From Corallochytrium limacisporum Hawaii (lineage: Eukaryota > Protista > Pluriformea), in NCBI GenBank assembly GCA_002811645.1, contig PDIP01000034.1:1-64000 (forward strand): 64,000 bases of DNA, in the 5' to 3' direction. A model generated the notes under the pieces. It made no database searches. It was not told the origin of the DNA and was given only the letters and a program-made list of their open reading frames with translations. The translations under genes were made by a program, and so were the position numbers. How positions within the stretch are numbered: the first letter of the stretch is position 1; every line of letters begins with the position of its first letter. Shown in pieces: positions 2,685 through 48,073 of the stretch.

Positions 2685-3107
2685 AAATGGATTATGCAGG
2701 CTCCTGGCGCTGGTTCGCGATTGATGATGTTGGTGGGTCAGTCGAGGACTGCATCCGGCAACAGCCCAAGGGACCATTGGTAAGCGTTGATTGTCGACGG
2801 ATGAGGTTGCTCTACCGAATTGTTTTCGAAGCCTTGGCGCAGGGTACCGTTTCGGCAGGGTACAGAAAGAGAACGCACGACTGCGGCCTCCCGAGCATGG
2901 ATTTTTTCTTGATATGCAGTTATATAGTCTTATATTTATGGTGTTGCGAATGGAATAAGATGATCGGAGACATGGATGACAAAAGTGAGATGTTTTGTGA
3001 CACTTGCAGACAGTCAGTTCAGACCGTAAAGAACCTTAATTTAATTGTCCAATTGGGAAAGTTTTTGAGACCCAATAGAACCCTCCAGGGTCATCTAAGC
3101 TGCCGAT

Positions 3108-15932: not shown

Positions 15933-17408
15933 ATGGGTCAAGGTTCTTCTCTATTCCGCGAACCTCCAGCTCCCTCATTTTTTGGCGAGCCGGTGGAAGA
16001 GCATGCAGCAACCACAGACCCCATCTTTGCAGGCATATGCATTGCTTTTGCTGCTCTCTGGATTGGTTTGGTGCTGATCGCACCATCATTTATAGAAACG
16101 ACGGGTAAATCAGGTAAACGACCGATGATATACTACCTAATATTTGTTACGGTGAGTATGCTGATGGGCTTCACTGCCCTCGGGGCCAACTGGGGCAGTT
16201 CTTGGATCTATGCCTCCGCAACCAGCCACGTGCCCTATTCTGCTCTAATCGACTCAGAGATCAATGCCAAGATTGAGGTCTTTGTGCAGCTACGGGGCGT
16301 GAATATTACGCTGGATGCTGACGAGGCCAGTGAACAGGCCCTCGGACAAAAGATTTTCTTCAACGAACACTTCAATTGGCAGTGGGATCAAGGACGCCTT
16401 GGATTCGGTCGACTTGCCGGACAGATCAACCAGGACTTCCGTCGCGAGCAACAGGAAGGTACCCCAAAACCTATCCTTGACATTGTCGAATACTTCACCC
16501 CCGATCAAGATTTCTTCCGGTGGGGCCGCCACTACCGTCTTGCCGGCTACTACACGTCAATCATCATGTGGATGAGCCTGGTCACTTGGTTTGGCATGAA
16601 CGTGTTAACACTAGTTAACCTGAAATACGGCGGCTACATGAGCATGTGGACCGGTGGTTGGTGGATGGCCGCCGTACTTACCTATGACTATGTCCTCAAG
16701 AAGCAGTTCCTCGACCTAAAAATCCCTTTCCCCGAAGAGGAACTGGATGTGACCCGGAACTATGGATGGACATTCTGGTGGGTGGTGGCCGGTACGGTCC
16801 TCGCGTTTGTGTGGGGCTTCGCGCTAGTGTCGATCGGACGCGCCATGGAAGCGGCCCGTGTTCAAAAGCTGGCTCCGAACGTCCGCATCAAGCACCGTGG
16901 AATTGCCGGTAATGTGTGGTACCTGCTCACCCGCAAAGATCTCTACTCCAGCACAGACAAAATGTTCCACAACGTGCCACGCACTAGCGACTTGCCTGAC
17001 ATCAAGACGCAGAAGGATAGGAAAGTGTCTGTGTACACTGAGGAAGACATAATCGCTGTGAAGGACATTTCCTCAGACAGCAATAGTGGCAGTTCTGAAC
17101 TGACCCGGTCTAAATACAGCGCTGGTGGCCAGCGTGAGACCGCCGGAACAGAGACCGACACAGACCACTACCTAGACCCGGGACTTCCGATAGGCAATGG
17201 TTTAGCACGGTGCAATTCGTACCAATTGGATGACATGCCAGTCAACTATGAAAGCCACGGCCATGAGTACAATGTGCCAGTGGGTGTTGGACTAGTGCGC
17301 AGTTCTTTGGCATCGACCGGCTCGGATTCGTTACGGCCTCGACAGTCATTCGATTCCGGAGCAGGCTACTCCCACCGTGATAGTACAACGCCGATGTTGC
17401 CAAGGTGA
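15933..17408 (+). CDS. DUOXA: Dual oxidase maturation factor (DUOXA family)
   Basis: Five-TM layout with DUOXA-type motifs: GANWGSSW, VQLRGVNITLD (N-glycosylation NIT), FNEHFNWQW, GTPKPILDIVEYFTP, YRLAGYYTSIIMW and YGWTFW. These compare with human DUOXA1 GLGGVNITL / YNEEFTW / GLPDPVLYLAEKFTP / YRLAGHYTSAMLW (from memory). Long Ser-rich C-tail. Confidence 0.9.
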   Translation: MGQGSSLFREPPAPSFFGEPVEEHAATTDPIFAGICIAFAALWIGLVLIAPSFIETTGKSGKRPMIYYLIFVTVSMLMGFTALGANWGSSWIYASATSHVPYSALIDSEINAKIEVFVQLRGVNITLDADEASEQALGQKIFFNEHFNWQWDQGRLGFGRLAGQINQDFRREQQEGTPKPILDIVEYFTPDQDFFRWGRHYRLAGYYTSIIMWMSLVTWFGMNVLTLVNLKYGGYMSMWTGGWWMAAVLTYDYVLKKQFLDLKIPFPEEELDVTRNYGWTFWWVVAGTVLAFVWGFALVSIGRAMEAARVQKLAPNVRIKHRGIAGNVWYLLTRKDLYSSTDKMFHNVPRTSDLPDIKTQKDRKVSVYTEEDIIAVKDISSDSNSGSSELTRSKYSAGGQRETAGTETDTDHYLDPGLPIGNGLARCNSYQLDDMPVNYESHGHEYNVPVGVGLVRSSLASTGSDSLRPRQSFDSGAGYSHRDSTTPMLPR

Positions 17409-27715: not shown

Positions 27716-27723
27716 TTTCGCGC
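27716..27723. promoter_or_regulatory. E2F consensus site TTTCGCGC upstream of MSH6
   Basis: Exact match to TTTSSCGC about 300 nt upstream of the MSH6 ATG, inside a GC-rich island. Confidence 0.55.
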
Positions 27724-27961: not shown

Positions 27962-28918
27962 TTAGTGTTGCATGGTCTTGTTGGTGCCAAGGACGAGACG
28001 GCGACGGGTACTGCGCAAAGCGGGAGAGCCTGTCTTGGTCTGCAGAGCGGCTGCAAACAGCGGTGAGTCAGTTCCACTGGTGTTCTCCTTGTCGTGAACG
28101 CCGGGCATAATGGCACGGGCAGTGGGCGTGGAAGAGGCCTTGGTAGGAGTTGAGGTTCGCGAAGAGCAGGTGCCGTATGTGTTCGTTGTGTGTGTCTTCT
28201 TTACAATTGGTGAGAGTTCGTGCTCTTCTGATACCTCTGTGGTGGTCTTTCGTGTTATGGTCTTCTTACCTGGTGTTCCCTCGTACTCAACGTCAAAGTC
28301 GGAGTCATCACTGAACTCGCTGAGGGCCTCGAGCAGGGCATTCTCTTCCTCCGCGGCATCGATTGCTTCCAGGATTTCGTCAACGTTTATCTTTTCTTTC
28401 GGGCTGAAGGGAATGACATCGGTGGCCTGGCCCATGCCGTGCTGTGGTGTCTGACAAGCGGAGACAGAGACGGTCGATGCGGGCAGACGTCCCTTGGTCG
28501 GTGTCTGTACGCCTATGTCGTCGGTGGGGTCATTAACGCTGCTCTCTTCTATTTGTTCTTCTTCCTCAATGTCGACTACCGCAGTGCTCTTGCGCTTGAC
28601 AGGGGGTGGCGTAGCACACTGTGTAAAGGCACTTACTGATCCAGCCCGTACGGCGACAATTTCGTTGTGAAGGTGCGGGCTGCGCAACACGTTAATGGAC
28701 GGGCTTCGAGGATCAAAGACAGTGTGCTGCTGTATCTCCATCTTCTGACCCTGGAGCATTGCAGCAATCGGTGTTCTTAAGAGTCCGGGAGTGGGGCTCC
28801 GAGGGTCGAATGGATCAGCACAGATCCCGTATTCTGGTGTTTCGTCTTCGTAGGTCTGGAACTGCTGCTCGCTCTCGGAGAGCCCAAGGGTTTGAAGCAG
28901 TAAAGACAGGGTATCCAT
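27962..28918 (-). CDS. CDCA3: CDCA3/Tome-1-like cell-cycle protein (disordered, APC/C degrons)
   Basis: Two motifs, DPRSPTPGLLRTPI and DPRSPSINVLRSP (human CDCA3 has DPRSPSAGILRTPI and DPRSPTLGIARTP). HDKEN box near the C-terminus as in CDCA3; RRRLVLGTN fits the D-box; many S/T-P sites. ATG 28918 has aaacATG context; an upstream in-frame ATG exists at 29056. Confidence 0.72.
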   Translation of the reverse strand: MDTLSLLLQTLGLSESEQQFQTYEDETPEYGICADPFDPRSPTPGLLRTPIAAMLQGQKMEIQQHTVFDPRSPSINVLRSPHLHNEIVAVRAGSVSAFTQCATPPPVKRKSTAVVDIEEEEQIEESSVNDPTDDIGVQTPTKGRLPASTVSVSACQTPQHGMGQATDVIPFSPKEKINVDEILEAIDAAEEENALLEALSEFSDDSDFDVEYEGTPGKKTITRKTTTEVSEEHELSPIVKKTHTTNTYGTCSSRTSTPTKASSTPTARAIMPGVHDKENTSGTDSPLFAAALQTKTGSPALRSTRRRLVLGTNKTMQH

Positions 28919-29314
28919 GTTTCCGCCGTCTAAATTTCCTTTTTGTTGTCCCGGACCTTTCCCCGAGGCATGGCATAACCAATTCCAACAGCCCAGGGTC
29001 GGATGCTGAACTATCAAGTACCTTTTCGTTCGGAAGTTTTCGTTCTGGAGAAACATAGAGCCGCCGGCAGATCCGCACACCCCCGACGTCAATCTCGAAC
29101 CGCAACGTCATGTGCAATAAAGACAACATGGGAAAGGTGTTGGGACATTAAATTGCTCTGATGCTTGGGTGTGTAACATTTACAAAAGAGAAGGCCCAAC
29201 ACGATACACGGAAACGGAACGCGAAACCCGCTTTCGATACTTTAGGTAACTATTGCACCCAAATCTCCCCCTATCACGGCCGGGCTGGGGCCCCGCTTCG
29301 CCCCCTTTGTACCG

Positions 29315-29334
29315 TTCAAACCCTCCGCGCCAAA
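29315..29334 (-). promoter_or_regulatory. E2F/CDE + CHR tandem element
   Basis: The minus strand reads TTTGGCGCGG-AGGG-TTTGAA: E2F consensus TTTGGCGC overlapping a CDE-like CGCGG, a 4-nt spacer and canonical CHR TTTGAA. About 400 nt upstream of, and co-oriented with, the CDCA3-like ORF. Confidence 0.7.
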
Positions 29335-29380: not shown

Positions 29381-29488
29381 NNNNNNNNNNNNNNNNNNNN
29401 NNNNNNNNNNNNNNNNNNNNNNNNNNNNNNNNNNNNNNNNNNNNNNNNNNNNNNNNNNNNNNNNNNNNNNNNNNNNNNNNNNNNNNNN
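29381..29488. other. Assembly gap (N run)
   Basis: Run of N between poly-C tracts. Confidence 0.99.
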
Positions 29489-30382: not shown

Positions 30383-32542
30383 ATGTCTTTCGCAGCGGCG
30401 GCGGCAAAGGGCCGTGCCGGTGGGTCCGAGAAGACCAACTCCAAGGGACCGGCGTCGCCAAAGGTTGCACCAAGTACCAACGGTGCACCCAAAACGCAAC
30501 CCAAAACTGACGGCAGTGAAGACGAAGAGCTCCGCTTTGACTACTCTCTGACCAACTTGATTGGACGAGTTGTGCAGGTGGAGACCATGTCGGGTGCGAT
30601 CTATTCTGGTCTTTTGCACACATGGGAGCCTTCCGGTCCAAACATTGGTGGGATCAATGGTCTTGTGTTGTATCAGGCGCAGAAGATGGAAAATAGCGAG
30701 GTAGCGACCACAAAGGACAGCAGCAATCCCCTGCACTACATCAACCTGGGCGGGAACCCTGTGCTTAAGGAACTTGTGCTCCATGGCAAGGACATTGGTC
30801 GTGTCTACCACCCTGACGTAGAGTATAACCCCATTATTGGCAGCGCGGGCAACGTGGCACGGCAGAATTTCATCACAGACACGGGCATTTCCGGTGCGTC
30901 GGGCAATCTCGCTGAACGTACACTGGAAAAATTCGACTTCATGGCCCACGCCACGGACGCCAATGGTAAACCAGTCAAGAGTGGATCGGACCTCGACCTT
31001 GATGCGGAGGCACGTCGGATGAAGTCGACGCAGTGGGACCAATTTGGACAGCTGAACAAGAAGCAGCCTGTGCCAAAATCAGGCGCTGATTCATTGGACT
31101 GGCGGGCACCTGCCGCTGCGGATGATGCGCATGGCGCAGGCACAGACGGGGCAACTGCAGGAGGGAGCGAACACCATGATTTTGACAAATCGTTCGAGAC
31201 GCTATACACTACACCACTAAAGCGTGACGTCCACACACCGGAGCAAATCAGGCGGGCTGAAAAGCTCGCCGCAGAGATCGAGCGCAACAAAGTCAGCCGC
31301 CAGCGGGCTAATCTGGAGTTGGACGATGACGCGGACGAAGAAGCCAAGTACTCTGCCGTCGTACGTGATGAGCCGCAGAAACCAGCGGACATTGAAAAGA
31401 AAGCGGCTGCCGCAGCGGCAGCTGCTGCTGCTGCTGCGGAGGAAGACGAAAAGAAAGAGGAAGCAGAGAAGGCCGCTGCTGCTGCTGCTGCTGAATCAGC
31501 CGGCAAGAAGCCGCTGAAGCTTAATCCAAAGGCCAAACCTTTCGTGTTCAACCCAAACGCCGCGTCTTTTGTACCGAGCGGCCCGAAGAAGGAAGAACAG
31601 ACTGCAGCCGCCGGCGGCGATGAACCCGCGGCTGGATCAACAGAAGAACCAACAGCGGCAGAAACGGAGAATGCTGGTGATCAGGAGGCCCACTTTCCGG
31701 ATATTGGCTCCATGACTATAAGTTCCAACCGCCCCACTGTTCTGCTCTGCGAAGGTTTCAACACTGTGCGCCAGAAGGAGCTGCAGCAGTCCAGCAGCGG
31801 CAATGGCAATTCCCGGAACCAGGGCAGTGGTCAACAGGGCAGTGGCAAGGGCGGCAAGGGCAAGAAGGGTGGTAACAACCGCAACAATGCGGACGGTTCC
31901 AATCGTGGCCACAACCCGAGCTGGACCGGCGCCCAGAACGGTCACTCTCCCGCCCGCGGTGGTCAGGGACAGTCCTACGCCAATATTACAGTCTATAAGC
32001 AAGGCAAGGGCAGTGGCAATCAAAAGGGAGGCGCCAACCCAGGGCCCAACAATGCCAACAGTGCGGCCGCAGCAGCAGCAGCAGCAGCGCACAGCCAGAA
32101 CGCCGCTGCCTTCAATCCTTACGGGGTGCCAATGGGCGGTCCGATGATGGCCGCGGGCTATCCAGCCATGGCCAGTGGCCCCGGAGGGCCGCGAGGAACG
32201 CAGGGCGGGCCTCAACAGTTCCAACGTGGATCACAGGGCGCTGCAGCGGGGACTGCGGGAATGGTTCCTGGCATGATGCCTGGCATGATGCCCCCGAACT
32301 ACAATCCCATGATGGCGGGTCCCCCTGGAGCATTCGGCAACCCGGGAGCGATGATGATGATGACGGGTGCGCCACCGTATGGCTACATGATGCCGCCACA
32401 GGCCTACGGTCAGTACAGTCCGGGCATGCCCCCCCAGCAGCAGGGCGGTGGCGGTGGCGGTGGTCGCGGCAACCGCCGCAGCAGCAGCAATCAGTCGGGC
32501 GGCAATAGTAATGCCAACACCAACAATGGCAACAGTGGCTGA
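30383..32542 (+). CDS. ATXN2: Ataxin-2 / Pbp1 family RNA-binding protein
   Basis: LSm domain (LTNLIGRVVQVETMSGAIYSGLL), FITDTGIS, ERTLEKF, WDQF, LsmAD (LYTTPL..AEKLAAEIE..DEEAKYSAVVR), PAM2 motifs (KLNPKAKPFVFNPNAASFVP) and a Met/Pro/Gly/Gln/Asn-rich low-complexity tail. Confidence 0.92.
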   Translation: MSFAAAAAKGRAGGSEKTNSKGPASPKVAPSTNGAPKTQPKTDGSEDEELRFDYSLTNLIGRVVQVETMSGAIYSGLLHTWEPSGPNIGGINGLVLYQAQKMENSEVATTKDSSNPLHYINLGGNPVLKELVLHGKDIGRVYHPDVEYNPIIGSAGNVARQNFITDTGISGASGNLAERTLEKFDFMAHATDANGKPVKSGSDLDLDAEARRMKSTQWDQFGQLNKKQPVPKSGADSLDWRAPAAADDAHGAGTDGATAGGSEHHDFDKSFETLYTTPLKRDVHTPEQIRRAEKLAAEIERNKVSRQRANLELDDDADEEAKYSAVVRDEPQKPADIEKKAAAAAAAAAAAAEEDEKKEEAEKAAAAAAAESAGKKPLKLNPKAKPFVFNPNAASFVPSGPKKEEQTAAAGGDEPAAGSTEEPTAAETENAGDQEAHFPDIGSMTISSNRPTVLLCEGFNTVRQKELQQSSSGNGNSRNQGSGQQGSGKGGKGKKGGNNRNNADGSNRGHNPSWTGAQNGHSPARGGQGQSYANITVYKQGKGSGNQKGGANPGPNNANSAAAAAAAAAHSQNAAAFNPYGVPMGGPMMAAGYPAMASGPGGPRGTQGGPQQFQRGSQGAAAGTAGMVPGMMPGMMPPNYNPMMAGPPGAFGNPGAMMMMTGAPPYGYMMPPQAYGQYSPGMPPQQQGGGGGGGRGNRRSSSNQSGGNSNANTNNGNSG

Positions 32543-47087: not shown

Positions 47088-48073
47088 AATTGTATATTTG
47101 AAGGTTTGATTGCCCTTGGTATATATAGAAACCCGTGTTGCCGGCTAAGTGAACTTCAGCTTAGGACTGTTTCTTGTATAGTGTTTCCCAAACTGTGATC
47201 AACTCTTTCGAAAGGTTCTTGTTCCTAACCTTTCGCGAGCTGTGATGTACACTGTTTTGTTTCTTTAAGGTGTGCAAGCAATAAGAATTCCAGTAGTCTT
47301 CTTTGAAACACGGGGGTAAATTTGACCTCTTAAATACGGCTTTTCTATATTACTGCTTAAAGAATGGTCATCTTTCTAAATTTTGGCATTACTAACACAA
47401 CGCAGTGGTCTTACGAAGACAAACGCGACGAGCTGTACCAACACTTCCCACACCTCAGCGCAAACACACGCTGTTGCATCCCAAAGTGGGGCCCCGTTCC
47501 ACAACCAGTCGCATCTCCTCCTATGTTGTTCGGTGTATGGAGAACCTCGAAGAGATGCAAGCCTATCAAAACGGACCGTACCAATAGAGACGAACATTGC
47601 TCCATCTCGGCAGTACATACATCTCTACTGGTCTGGACTCAGTCTTTGCACTCACTGACCAAAAAGTTTGTGGCTGGATGTGGCTGTTTATGTGTGTGTG
47701 TGTGCGTGTGTGTGTGGAAAGCTGGTTTGCCTTGCTTTTCAGTGCCCAGCACTACCCCCACGTGTGCTTCGCCGCTGCGGGAGGGATAATTGGGAAGAGA
47801 GGGGTGGGGAAGAGGGTATTGGTGAACCAGCAGGGTGGAGACGGGCGGCGCGGAGAAGGGACCGGGGAAGCGGCAGCCAAAGGAAGGGATAGGTGAGAAG
47901 GAGAAATGCACAAGTTCCAGATCCCGGATATGTAATTCAAAACAAGCCCGCGGGGCGACGGCGCTGAGTGCGGGACGGTGGGTGACTATGAAAGCGTTGG
48001 GATGGTGTATGATTGTACTGATATGTCGATTAACGTAGCAAACGAAAGCAACCACATGCTACCAGTGAGACGC

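What the first reader, a model, noticed from the sequence alone, without database searches (positions are those of the whole stretch)
29315..29334. Animal-type CDE/CHR (DREAM/MuvB) promoter element upstream of a CDCA3-like gene in an apparently unicellular, intron-poor eukaryote
Seen: the minus strand reads TTTGGCGCGG AGGG TTTGAA, about 400 nt upstream of the ATG at 28918 and in sense orientation. An additional ACGCGAAA lies at about 29219-29226. Known: mammalian G2/M promoters use CDE + 4-nt spacer + CHR TTTGAA (from memory CDC25C GGCGG-AAGG-TTTGAA, CDK1 CGCGG-TGAG-TTTGAA), bound by DREAM/MMB through LIN54. Mammalian CDCA3/Tome-1 is itself a CDE/CHR-regulated gene. Inference: the cis-regulatory grammar and its link to this target gene may predate animals. 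A 20-bp match with exact spacing in front of the expected gene is unlikely to be chance, but it is a single instance.
Basis: partly seen in the sequence, partly recalled or inferred. Interest (0 to 1): 0.9.

Follow-up and report, generated by a model that had tools for sequence, protein, structure and literature searches.

The report
DREAM-type mitotic promoter code in Corallochytrium
A single-celled relative of animals puts the same two-part DNA switch that animals use for cell-division genes (an E2F site at a fixed distance from a LIN54 site) in front of many of its own mitotic genes; the switch is already known from animals and reported from a ciliate, so this is a new, testable case rather than a new kind.

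Summary
The 20-bp site is real, 397 nt upstream of a CDCA3-like gene in Corallochytrium limacisporum, and 16/20 identical to the human CDK1 CDE/CHR. The register that is enriched is GCGSS-N5-TTYGAA/TTCAAA: GCGSSAA-N3-TTYRAA occurs 84 times against about 15 per other spacer. It lies upstream of KIFC1, KIF18A, KIF11, CENP-E, KIF22, both BUB1-family genes, CAP-G, a RAD54-like gene and LIN54 itself, and of none of 8 MCMs. LIN54 (DNA-reading tyrosines kept), LIN9, E2F, DP and RB are encoded; LIN52 and B-Myb were not detected. Against: cyclin B, NDC80 and SMC1-4 lack the strict form; RNA contigs end about 350 nt downstream of the site; no binding or expression data exist. 'Animal-type' overstates it: an E2F/DP-CHR hybrid motif was reported in Tetrahymena in 2021. 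New here: the fixed-spacing code together with the animal mitotic target set in a unicellular holozoan. The scan noted the same motif at other places of this genome (unchecked notes).

The parts
29315..29334 (-). Composite E2F/CDE + CHR element, TTTGGCGCGG AGGG TTTGAA
   Evidence: member of the 26-site class; 16/20 identical to the human CDK1 probe quoted in PMC4974476
29315..29320 (-). CHR hexamer TTTGAA (LIN54 consensus TTYRAA)
   Evidence: consensus from PMC4974476
29325..29334 (-). E2F/CDE half: full E2F consensus TTTGGCGC (29334-29327); GCGCG core at -10..-6 relative to the CHR
29321..29324 (-). 4-nt spacer AGGG (free in sequence across the genome's sites, fixed in length)
29219..29226 (-). 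Second E2F-like word TTTCGCGT without a CHR partner; significance not tested
27962..28918 (-). Intronless 318-aa CDCA3/Tome-1-like ORF, probable target
28769..28807 (-). First DPRSP-x5-RTP repeat (aa 38-50)
28676..28714 (-). Second DPRSP-x5-RSP repeat (aa 69-81)
28082..28090 (-). KEN box (DKEN) near the C-terminus, as in shark CDCA3
27965..28964 (-). Stretch covered by assembled contigs of two probable RNA runs; 5' ends at 28963 and 28964, no joint
30383..32542 (+). Divergent ataxin-2 gene, 1053 nt away across the assembly gap; alternative target of the site

Best explanation
The site is one of roughly 70-140 binding sites for a DREAM-like complex. LIN54 grips the TT and AA steps of TTYRAA in the minor groove with its two tyrosines; an E2F/DP dimer binds the GCGSS core five bases upstream; LIN9 and RB bridge the two, which is why the spacing is fixed. 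The complex most likely holds the CDCA3-like gene and other mitotic genes repressed outside late cell cycle, and lets go or switches partner before mitosis. Shown here: the motif, its fixed spacing, its polarity and non-coding position, its presence at mitotic genes, the genes for LIN54, LIN9, E2F, DP and RB. Inferred from animal work: binding, complex assembly, repression, timing. The activating partner is unknown.
For: Spacing lock: GCGSSAA-N3-TTYRAA 84 sites vs 14.9 per other spacer, 5.6-fold, Poisson p 4e-35; CGCG-N5-TTTGAA 73 vs 42 per other spacer, p 1e-5. Three CHR variants share the register: TTTGAA 109 vs 42, TTCGAA 73 vs 32, TTCAAA 91 vs 57 reversed controls, matching LIN54's TTYRAA. 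All 14 in-register sites among the 51 are outside long ORFs, against 19 of 37 others (Fisher p 0.0008). 5 of 12 kinesins carry it within 1 kb and they are KIFC1, KIF18A, KIF11, CENP-E and KIF22, all listed human DREAM targets. Prospective hits: both Mad3/BUB1 genes, sites 453 and 588 nt upstream of the N-terminal domain, in sense. 0 of 8 MCMs. CAP-G, RAD54-like, LIN54 itself and probably LIN9. LIN54 aligns to PDB 5FD3 over both CXC domains with KLY and KNY kept; E2F, E2F7/8-like, DP, RB, LIN9 found.
Against: No binding, expression-timing or reporter data. The strict form is absent near the best cyclin B/A candidates, NDC80 and all four SMC-hinge genes, and doubtful for PLK1; CHR-only promoters could not be scored. 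LIN52 and the Myb C-terminal domain gave blanks, no clean three-repeat Myb was seen, LIN37 and RBBP4 were not searched. RNA contigs stop about 350 nt downstream of the site, farther than the +/-200 nt windows used in mammalian work. The register was chosen after seeing kinesin promoters, so the kinesin count is partly circular. Several in-register sites lie next to genes with no evident cell-cycle role. The reversed-pattern control is rough (TTTAAA 17 vs 44).
Confidence: 0.8

Rival explanations
1. The motif family is a real DREAM-type code, but this one site serves another gene (the divergent ataxin-2) or nothing, and the CDCA3 link is coincidence.
For: RNA contigs end about 350 nt downstream; the site lies between two divergent genes; CDCA3 orthology rests on three short motifs.
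Against: Sense polarity and 397-nt distance match the other mitotic targets (204-800 nt, sense in all but KIF11); the site is in the strictest class (26 per genome); CDCA3 is a listed human DREAM target; ataxin-2 is 1053 nt away in antisense.
Confidence: 0.08
2. The composite is bound by E2F/DP and LIN54 but acts as a quiescence or DNA-damage repressor without a G2/M activation step, so it works like DREAM but not like MMB.
For: No B-Myb C-terminal domain or LIN52 detected; cyclin B lacks the strict form; DNA-repair-type SNF2 genes carry it; in C. elegans and plants DREAM also acts on repair and meiotic genes. This is a refinement of the best explanation, not an exclusive alternative.
Against: The target list is dominated by spindle, kinetochore and checkpoint genes and spares MCMs; the blanks for short, divergent subunits do not show absence.
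Confidence: 0.3
3. One unrelated factor, or the two-domain E2F7/8-like protein, reads the whole 16-mer; resemblance to CDE/CHR is superficial.
For: A single rigid spacing fits a single protein; an E2F7/8-like gene exists; the dominant register is 2 nt longer than in human RAD51, CDC45 and B-myb sites.
Against: The downstream half varies as TTTGAA/TTCGAA/TTCAAA, the LIN54 rule; LIN54 keeps its tyrosines; the human CDK1 site has the same register; the LIN54 gene carries the site.
Confidence: 0.07
4. The excess comes from a repeat family or from base composition.
For: A repeat does inflate spacer 5 (one 18-mer seven times); promoters are CpG-richer than coding DNA.
Against: In-register sites differ in spacer and flanks; composition cannot favour one spacer over its neighbours (44 of the first 100 rows at spacer 3, 2-15 at the others).
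Confidence: 0.02

Closest known systems
[quoted passage not shown]
   Same: GC-rich E2F-like half upstream, TTYRAA downstream, 4-nt spacer by the mammalian count; 16/20 identity to CDK1; same polarity; same target classes (mitotic kinesins, BUB1, NCAPG, RAD54, CDCA3); LIN54 tyrosines kept.
   Different: Full E2F consensus (either orientation) is joined to a full CHR, whereas mammalian CDEs are weak and present in only 23% of CHR promoters; no excess of TTTAAA; sites lie 200-800 nt from the ATG and, here, about 350 nt from the contig end; LIN52 and B-Myb not detected.
Mammalian E2F/CLE tandem sites (RAD51, CDC45, B-myb; PMC5716687)
   Same: Strong E2F site followed at fixed distance by a LIN54-type hexamer.
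   Different: Those sites are GCGSS-N3-hexamer with a degenerate CLE at S-phase genes; that register shows no excess here (6 vs mean 7's first 100 rows), the dominant one is GCGSS-N5 with an intact CHR at mitotic genes.
C. elegans DRM Motif 1 / CDE-CHR and the Drosophila dREAM extended motif (PMC3093354, PMC8552245)
   Same: Hybrid E2F/DP + LIN54 motif at cell-division genes; DREAM subunit promoters are themselves bound.
   Different: Shown by ChIP there, only by sequence statistics here; the register could not be compared because the logos are figures.
[quoted passage not shown]
   Same: Unicellular eukaryote with LIN54, LIN9, E2F/DP and a hybrid motif; LIN37 and LIN52 also not found there.
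   Different: Anqa1 targets were enriched for gene expression, chromatin, translation and ribosome terms, and the authors state that CHR elements were not yet studied there; here the carriers are the animal mitotic set.
CDCA3/Tome-1 and insect msb1l proteins
   Same: Two DPRSP-x5-R[TS]P repeats and a C-terminal DKEN in a disordered protein of about 300 aa.
   Different: No Pfam hit; similarity limited to these motifs (13/18 best stretch to shark CDCA3); lacks the N-terminal MG-x3-S seen in the animal proteins.

Membership tests
CDE/CHR (DREAM/MuvB) element | CHR hexamer matching TTYRAA | tested here: met
   TTTGAA at 29320-29315; TTTGAA, TTCGAA, TTCAAA all in excess genome-wide
CDE/CHR (DREAM/MuvB) element | GC-rich E2F-like element upstream with a 4-nt spacer | tested here: met
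   Met at this site and identical in register to human CDK1; spacing locked genome-wide
CDE/CHR (DREAM/MuvB) element | Enrichment at late cell-cycle genes | tested here: met
   5 mitotic kinesins, 2 BUB1-family genes, CAP-G; 0/8 MCM; misses at cyclins, NDC80, SMCs. Small gene set, partly post hoc
CDE/CHR (DREAM/MuvB) element | Position close to the transcription start (within about 200 nt) | tested here: inconclusive
   RNA contigs end 350 nt downstream, but contigs cannot show a start and they also stop at the stop codon on the 3' side
CDE/CHR (DREAM/MuvB) element | Bound by LIN54/MuvB; mutation deregulates cell-cycle expression | not testable with these tools
   Needs binding and reporter assays
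DREAM/MuvB complex | LIN54 with tandem CXC domains and both minor-groove tyrosines | tested here: met
   (tyrosine numbering inferred from the alignment)
DREAM/MuvB complex | LIN9, E2F, DP, pocket protein | tested here: met
DREAM/MuvB complex | LIN52 | tested here: inconclusive
   No match, but no control rang
DREAM/MuvB complex | LIN37 and RBBP4 | not tested
MMB (Myb-MuvB) activator | Three-repeat Myb with the MuvB-binding C-terminal domain | tested here: inconclusive
   Cmyb_C blank; only two-repeat tandem Myb frames seen, 6 candidates unscored
CDCA3/Tome-1 | Tandem DPRSP-x5-RTP repeats and C-terminal KEN box | tested here: met
   (profile hit to shark CDCA3, E 4e-7)
CDCA3/Tome-1 | SCF/Skp1 association and Wee1 turnover (from memory) | not testable with these tools
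   No data

The most novel reading that the evidence does not exclude
The whole late-cell-cycle regulon of animals, that is the bipartite site with locked spacing together with its target list down to CDCA3, was already wired in the last common ancestor of Holozoa; Corallochytrium keeps the ancestral form (full E2F + full CHR in the CDK1 register, acting some hundreds of bases upstream, possibly without LIN52 or B-Myb), and the mammalian split into E2F/CLE and CDE/CHR promoters is a later specialisation.
Probability: 0.4. Interest if true: 0.72.

Novelty: new member of a known kind. Interest (0 to 1): 0.57.

Why it matters
DREAM proteins are known to be ancient, but whether their DNA code and their mitotic targets are equally old has little direct evidence: my searches of the held library found no paper on CHR/MuvB in unicellular holozoans or choanoflagellates, and the Capsaspora cell-cycle study does not treat CHR or DREAM. 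This genome shows the code with a sharp spacing rule and an animal-like target set, in a compact, intronless genome that grows in axenic culture (stable transfection has been reported, from memory). It makes the origin of G2/M transcription control directly testable, and the site list offers a way to nominate unnamed mitotic genes.

Tried and rejected
Single-sequence homologue search for the CDCA3-like protein: only itself; Pfam blank; ESM Atlas hits weak, below the recognition level; a paper search linking msb1l to CDCA3 found nothing. First guesses that proved wrong: L002's neighbour is a TBC RabGAP, not CENP-N; L047's are a Sel1 protein and an unnamed ORF, not NSE2; the kinase opposite KIF11 is MRCK/ROCK-family, citron not shown. 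TTTAAA variant: no excess. Cross-species check on animal KIF22 and msb1l-like promoters (seven loci): no in-register site; amphioxus KIF22 has a CGCG near TTTGAA in another register; uninformative because animal 5' introns put the start out of reach. TFIIB recognition element + TATA reading: considered and dropped, since the downstream word is TTYGAA/TTCAAA at a 5-nt gap and the TATA-like TTTAAA is the one variant without excess. 5' UTR intron or trans-splicing as cause of the contig end: no joint and no AG at 28964, and the species has 0.0 introns per kb. The sigma-70 scan is irrelevant to a eukaryote. No human contig was met or used.

Full report
Observation. The minus strand at 29334-29315 reads TTTGGCGCGG AGGG TTTGAA, 397 nt upstream of the ATG at 28918 and in the same sense; the extra TTTCGCGT is at 29226-29219. 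An assembly gap (29381-29488) lies 46 nt further upstream, none between site and gene. The human CDK1 probe printed in PMC4974476 contains TTTAGCGCGG TGAG TTTGAA, so 16 of 20 bases agree.

Organism. The assembly has 24,109,830 bases in 286 contigs and long intronless ORFs. Corallochytrium limacisporum is given as 24.1 Mb, 7535 genes and 0.0 introns per coding kb (PMC5560861), and a kinesin from this genome is held in EukProt as Clim_evm8s67. The host is thus a unicellular holozoan.

The gene. The 318-aa ORF has no Pfam match and no word-indexed homologue. An exhaustive phmmer search gives five weak hits through DPRSP-x5-RTP repeats, one from Ciona. A profile of these finds insect msb1l (E 1e-12) and shark CDCA3 (E 4e-7). 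Shark CDCA3 has two such repeats and a C-terminal DKEN, as this protein does; the N-terminal MG-x3-S of the animal proteins is missing. 'CDCA3-like' is fair; orthology rests on short motifs. CDCA3 is in the table of human p53-DREAM targets (PMC5729532). Two probable RNA runs give one unspliced contig each over 27965/27971-28963/28964. The gene is therefore probably expressed, the ATG at 28918 is the first in the contig, and the 5' end may lie about 350 nt downstream of the element. Contigs cannot fix a start, and these also stop at the stop codon.

Genome-wide test. Inspection of the loci showed that the non-coding matches share G at -10. CGCG-N5-TTTGAA occurs 73 times against about 42 for each other spacer from 1 to 10 (p 1e-5). 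GCGSS-N5-TTTGAA occurs 109 times (control 42), with TTCGAA 73 (32), with TTCAAA 91 (57), with TTTAAA 17 (44). The last figure shows that the reversed control is rough, so the spacer control is the one to trust: GCGSSAA-N3-TTYRAA occurs 84 times, the other eight spacers 119 times in all, 14.9 each, a 5.6-fold excess (p 4e-35). TTSGCGSS-N5-TTYRAA, which the window's site matches, occurs 26 times against 5. GCGSSAA is the E2F consensus TTSSCGC read backwards, so the element is an E2F core at -10..-6, with its T-tract on either side, followed by the LIN54 consensus TTYRAA (PMC4974476). Spacer letters differ from site to site, so this is not a repeat. Of the 51 matches, the 14 in this register are all outside long ORFs, against 19 of the other 37 (p 0.0008). 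The patterns were refined after looking at data; the spacer result is large enough to survive that.

Targets. Among 12 kinesin genes, five have the composite within 1 kb upstream and none has it at spacers 0-4, 6 or 8-12. They are KIFC1 (two sites), KIF18A, KIF11, CENP-E and KIF22 by best solved-structure match; non-carriers include a KIF13-like, a KIF7-like and two kinesin-13 proteins. All five carriers are listed human DREAM targets, but so are KIF2C and KIF24, whose apparent counterparts lack it. This count is partly circular because I saw these promoters before fixing the register. Tests made afterwards, by coordinates only: both Mad3/BUB1-domain genes have a site of the 84-member class 453 and 588 nt upstream, in sense; NDC80, four SMC-hinge genes and the top cyclins have none, and a site about 1.4 kb before the estimated PLK1 start is doubtful (nine TTTGAA sites beyond contig 275 were not listed). 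With about 0.012 chance per gene, two hits in some nine mitotic genes has p near 0.005 (hand calculation). None of eight MCM genes has a site, and MSH6 in this window has a bare E2F site, which fits the mammalian split between E2F-only G1/S genes and CHR-bearing G2/M genes (PMC5716687). Motif-first neighbours include condensin CAP-G, a RAD54-like and a second SNF2 gene and LIN54 itself, but also genes with no evident cell-cycle role.

Machinery. One LIN54 with two CXC domains aligns to human LIN54 in PDB 5FD3 (E 6e-24) and keeps the tyrosine in each domain (KLY, KNY), the residues that read the TT and AA steps. A canonical E2F with its coiled-coil/marked-box domain, a DP and an E2F7/8-like protein, one LIN9 and one RB are present. 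LIN52 and the Myb C-terminal domain gave blanks without a positive control, and no clear three-repeat Myb was seen. LIN37 and RBBP4 were not searched.

Mechanism. Most likely (0.8) a LIN54-LIN9 core and an E2F/DP-RB module bind together, LIN54 in the minor groove of TTYRAA and E2F/DP in the major groove of the GC core, as modelled for the human complex; the protein bridge explains the locked spacing. By analogy the complex represses mitotic genes in G1 and quiescence. Motif, spacing, polarity, targets and protein inventory are shown here; binding, assembly and timing are inferred. Whether an activating MMB-like phase exists is open (repression-only reading 0.3).

Comparison. It works like, and by sequence belongs with, the CDE/CHR and hybrid E2F-LIN54 motifs of mammals, flies and worms (PMC3093354, PMC8552245). 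It differs from tested human E2F/CLE sites (RAD51, CDC45, B-myb), whose GCG core is two bases nearer the hexamer; that register has no excess here, while the human CDK1 site fits both. [quoted passage not shown] I found no paper on the element in unicellular holozoans; the library omits most subscription journals. Animal promoter comparisons were uninformative.

Verdict. A real, genome-wide DREAM-type cis-code, of which the reported site is one of the best examples; new member of a known kind, with a distinctive register and the animal mitotic target set. Other first-stage notes of this scan saw it elsewhere in the genome; they are unchecked leads and were not counted as evidence. Interest 0.57.

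Noticed in passing
window 27716-27723 (+): Perfect E2F site TTTCGCGC about 300 nt upstream of MSH6 with no CHR in register, as expected for a G1/S gene. My patterns found no such site upstream of RAD17.
   Followed up: partly
G000:C186:25797-27152: The LIN9 frame (1033 aa) also holds an N-terminal Myb/SANT match, an architecture I recall from plant ALWAYS EARLY proteins rather than animal LIN9; an in-register site lies at C186:25037.
   Followed up: no
G000:C143:280172-284094: The RB gene is directly followed by an MCM gene on the same strand.
   Followed up: no
G000:C279:66653-67600; C99:114843-115095; C177:81-132; C7:82019-82269; C247:160598-160691: Clusters of two or three in-register sites within 1 kb; the neighbours are good candidates for strongly regulated cell-cycle genes (the C247 pair is KIFC1).
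   Followed up: no
G000:C43:1, C50:143339, C60:16855, C77:207572, C84:75945, C90:1, C173:289499: An identical 18-mer (GCGCCAACCGAGTTCAAA) recurs at least seven times, twice at contig ends: a repeat, possibly tRNA-like with a B-box.
   Followed up: no
L007:3-1217 (-): Unnamed ORF with a DKEN motif, 284 nt behind a strong composite site; no Pfam or Atlas identity. Candidate unnamed mitotic gene.
   Followed up: partly
window 27965-28964: The second RNA run differs at five bases (a second strain); contigs of both runs also stop at the stop codon, so their ends may be assembly breaks.
   Followed up: partly
window 47936-47951 (-) and 2825-2840 (-): Two more in-register matches in the window, one 849 nt upstream of eIF3b, one near no clear target; probably background.
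   Followed up: no
window 15933-17408 (+): DUOX maturation factor (Pfam DuoxA, E 2e-57) in a unicellular holozoan.
   Followed up: no
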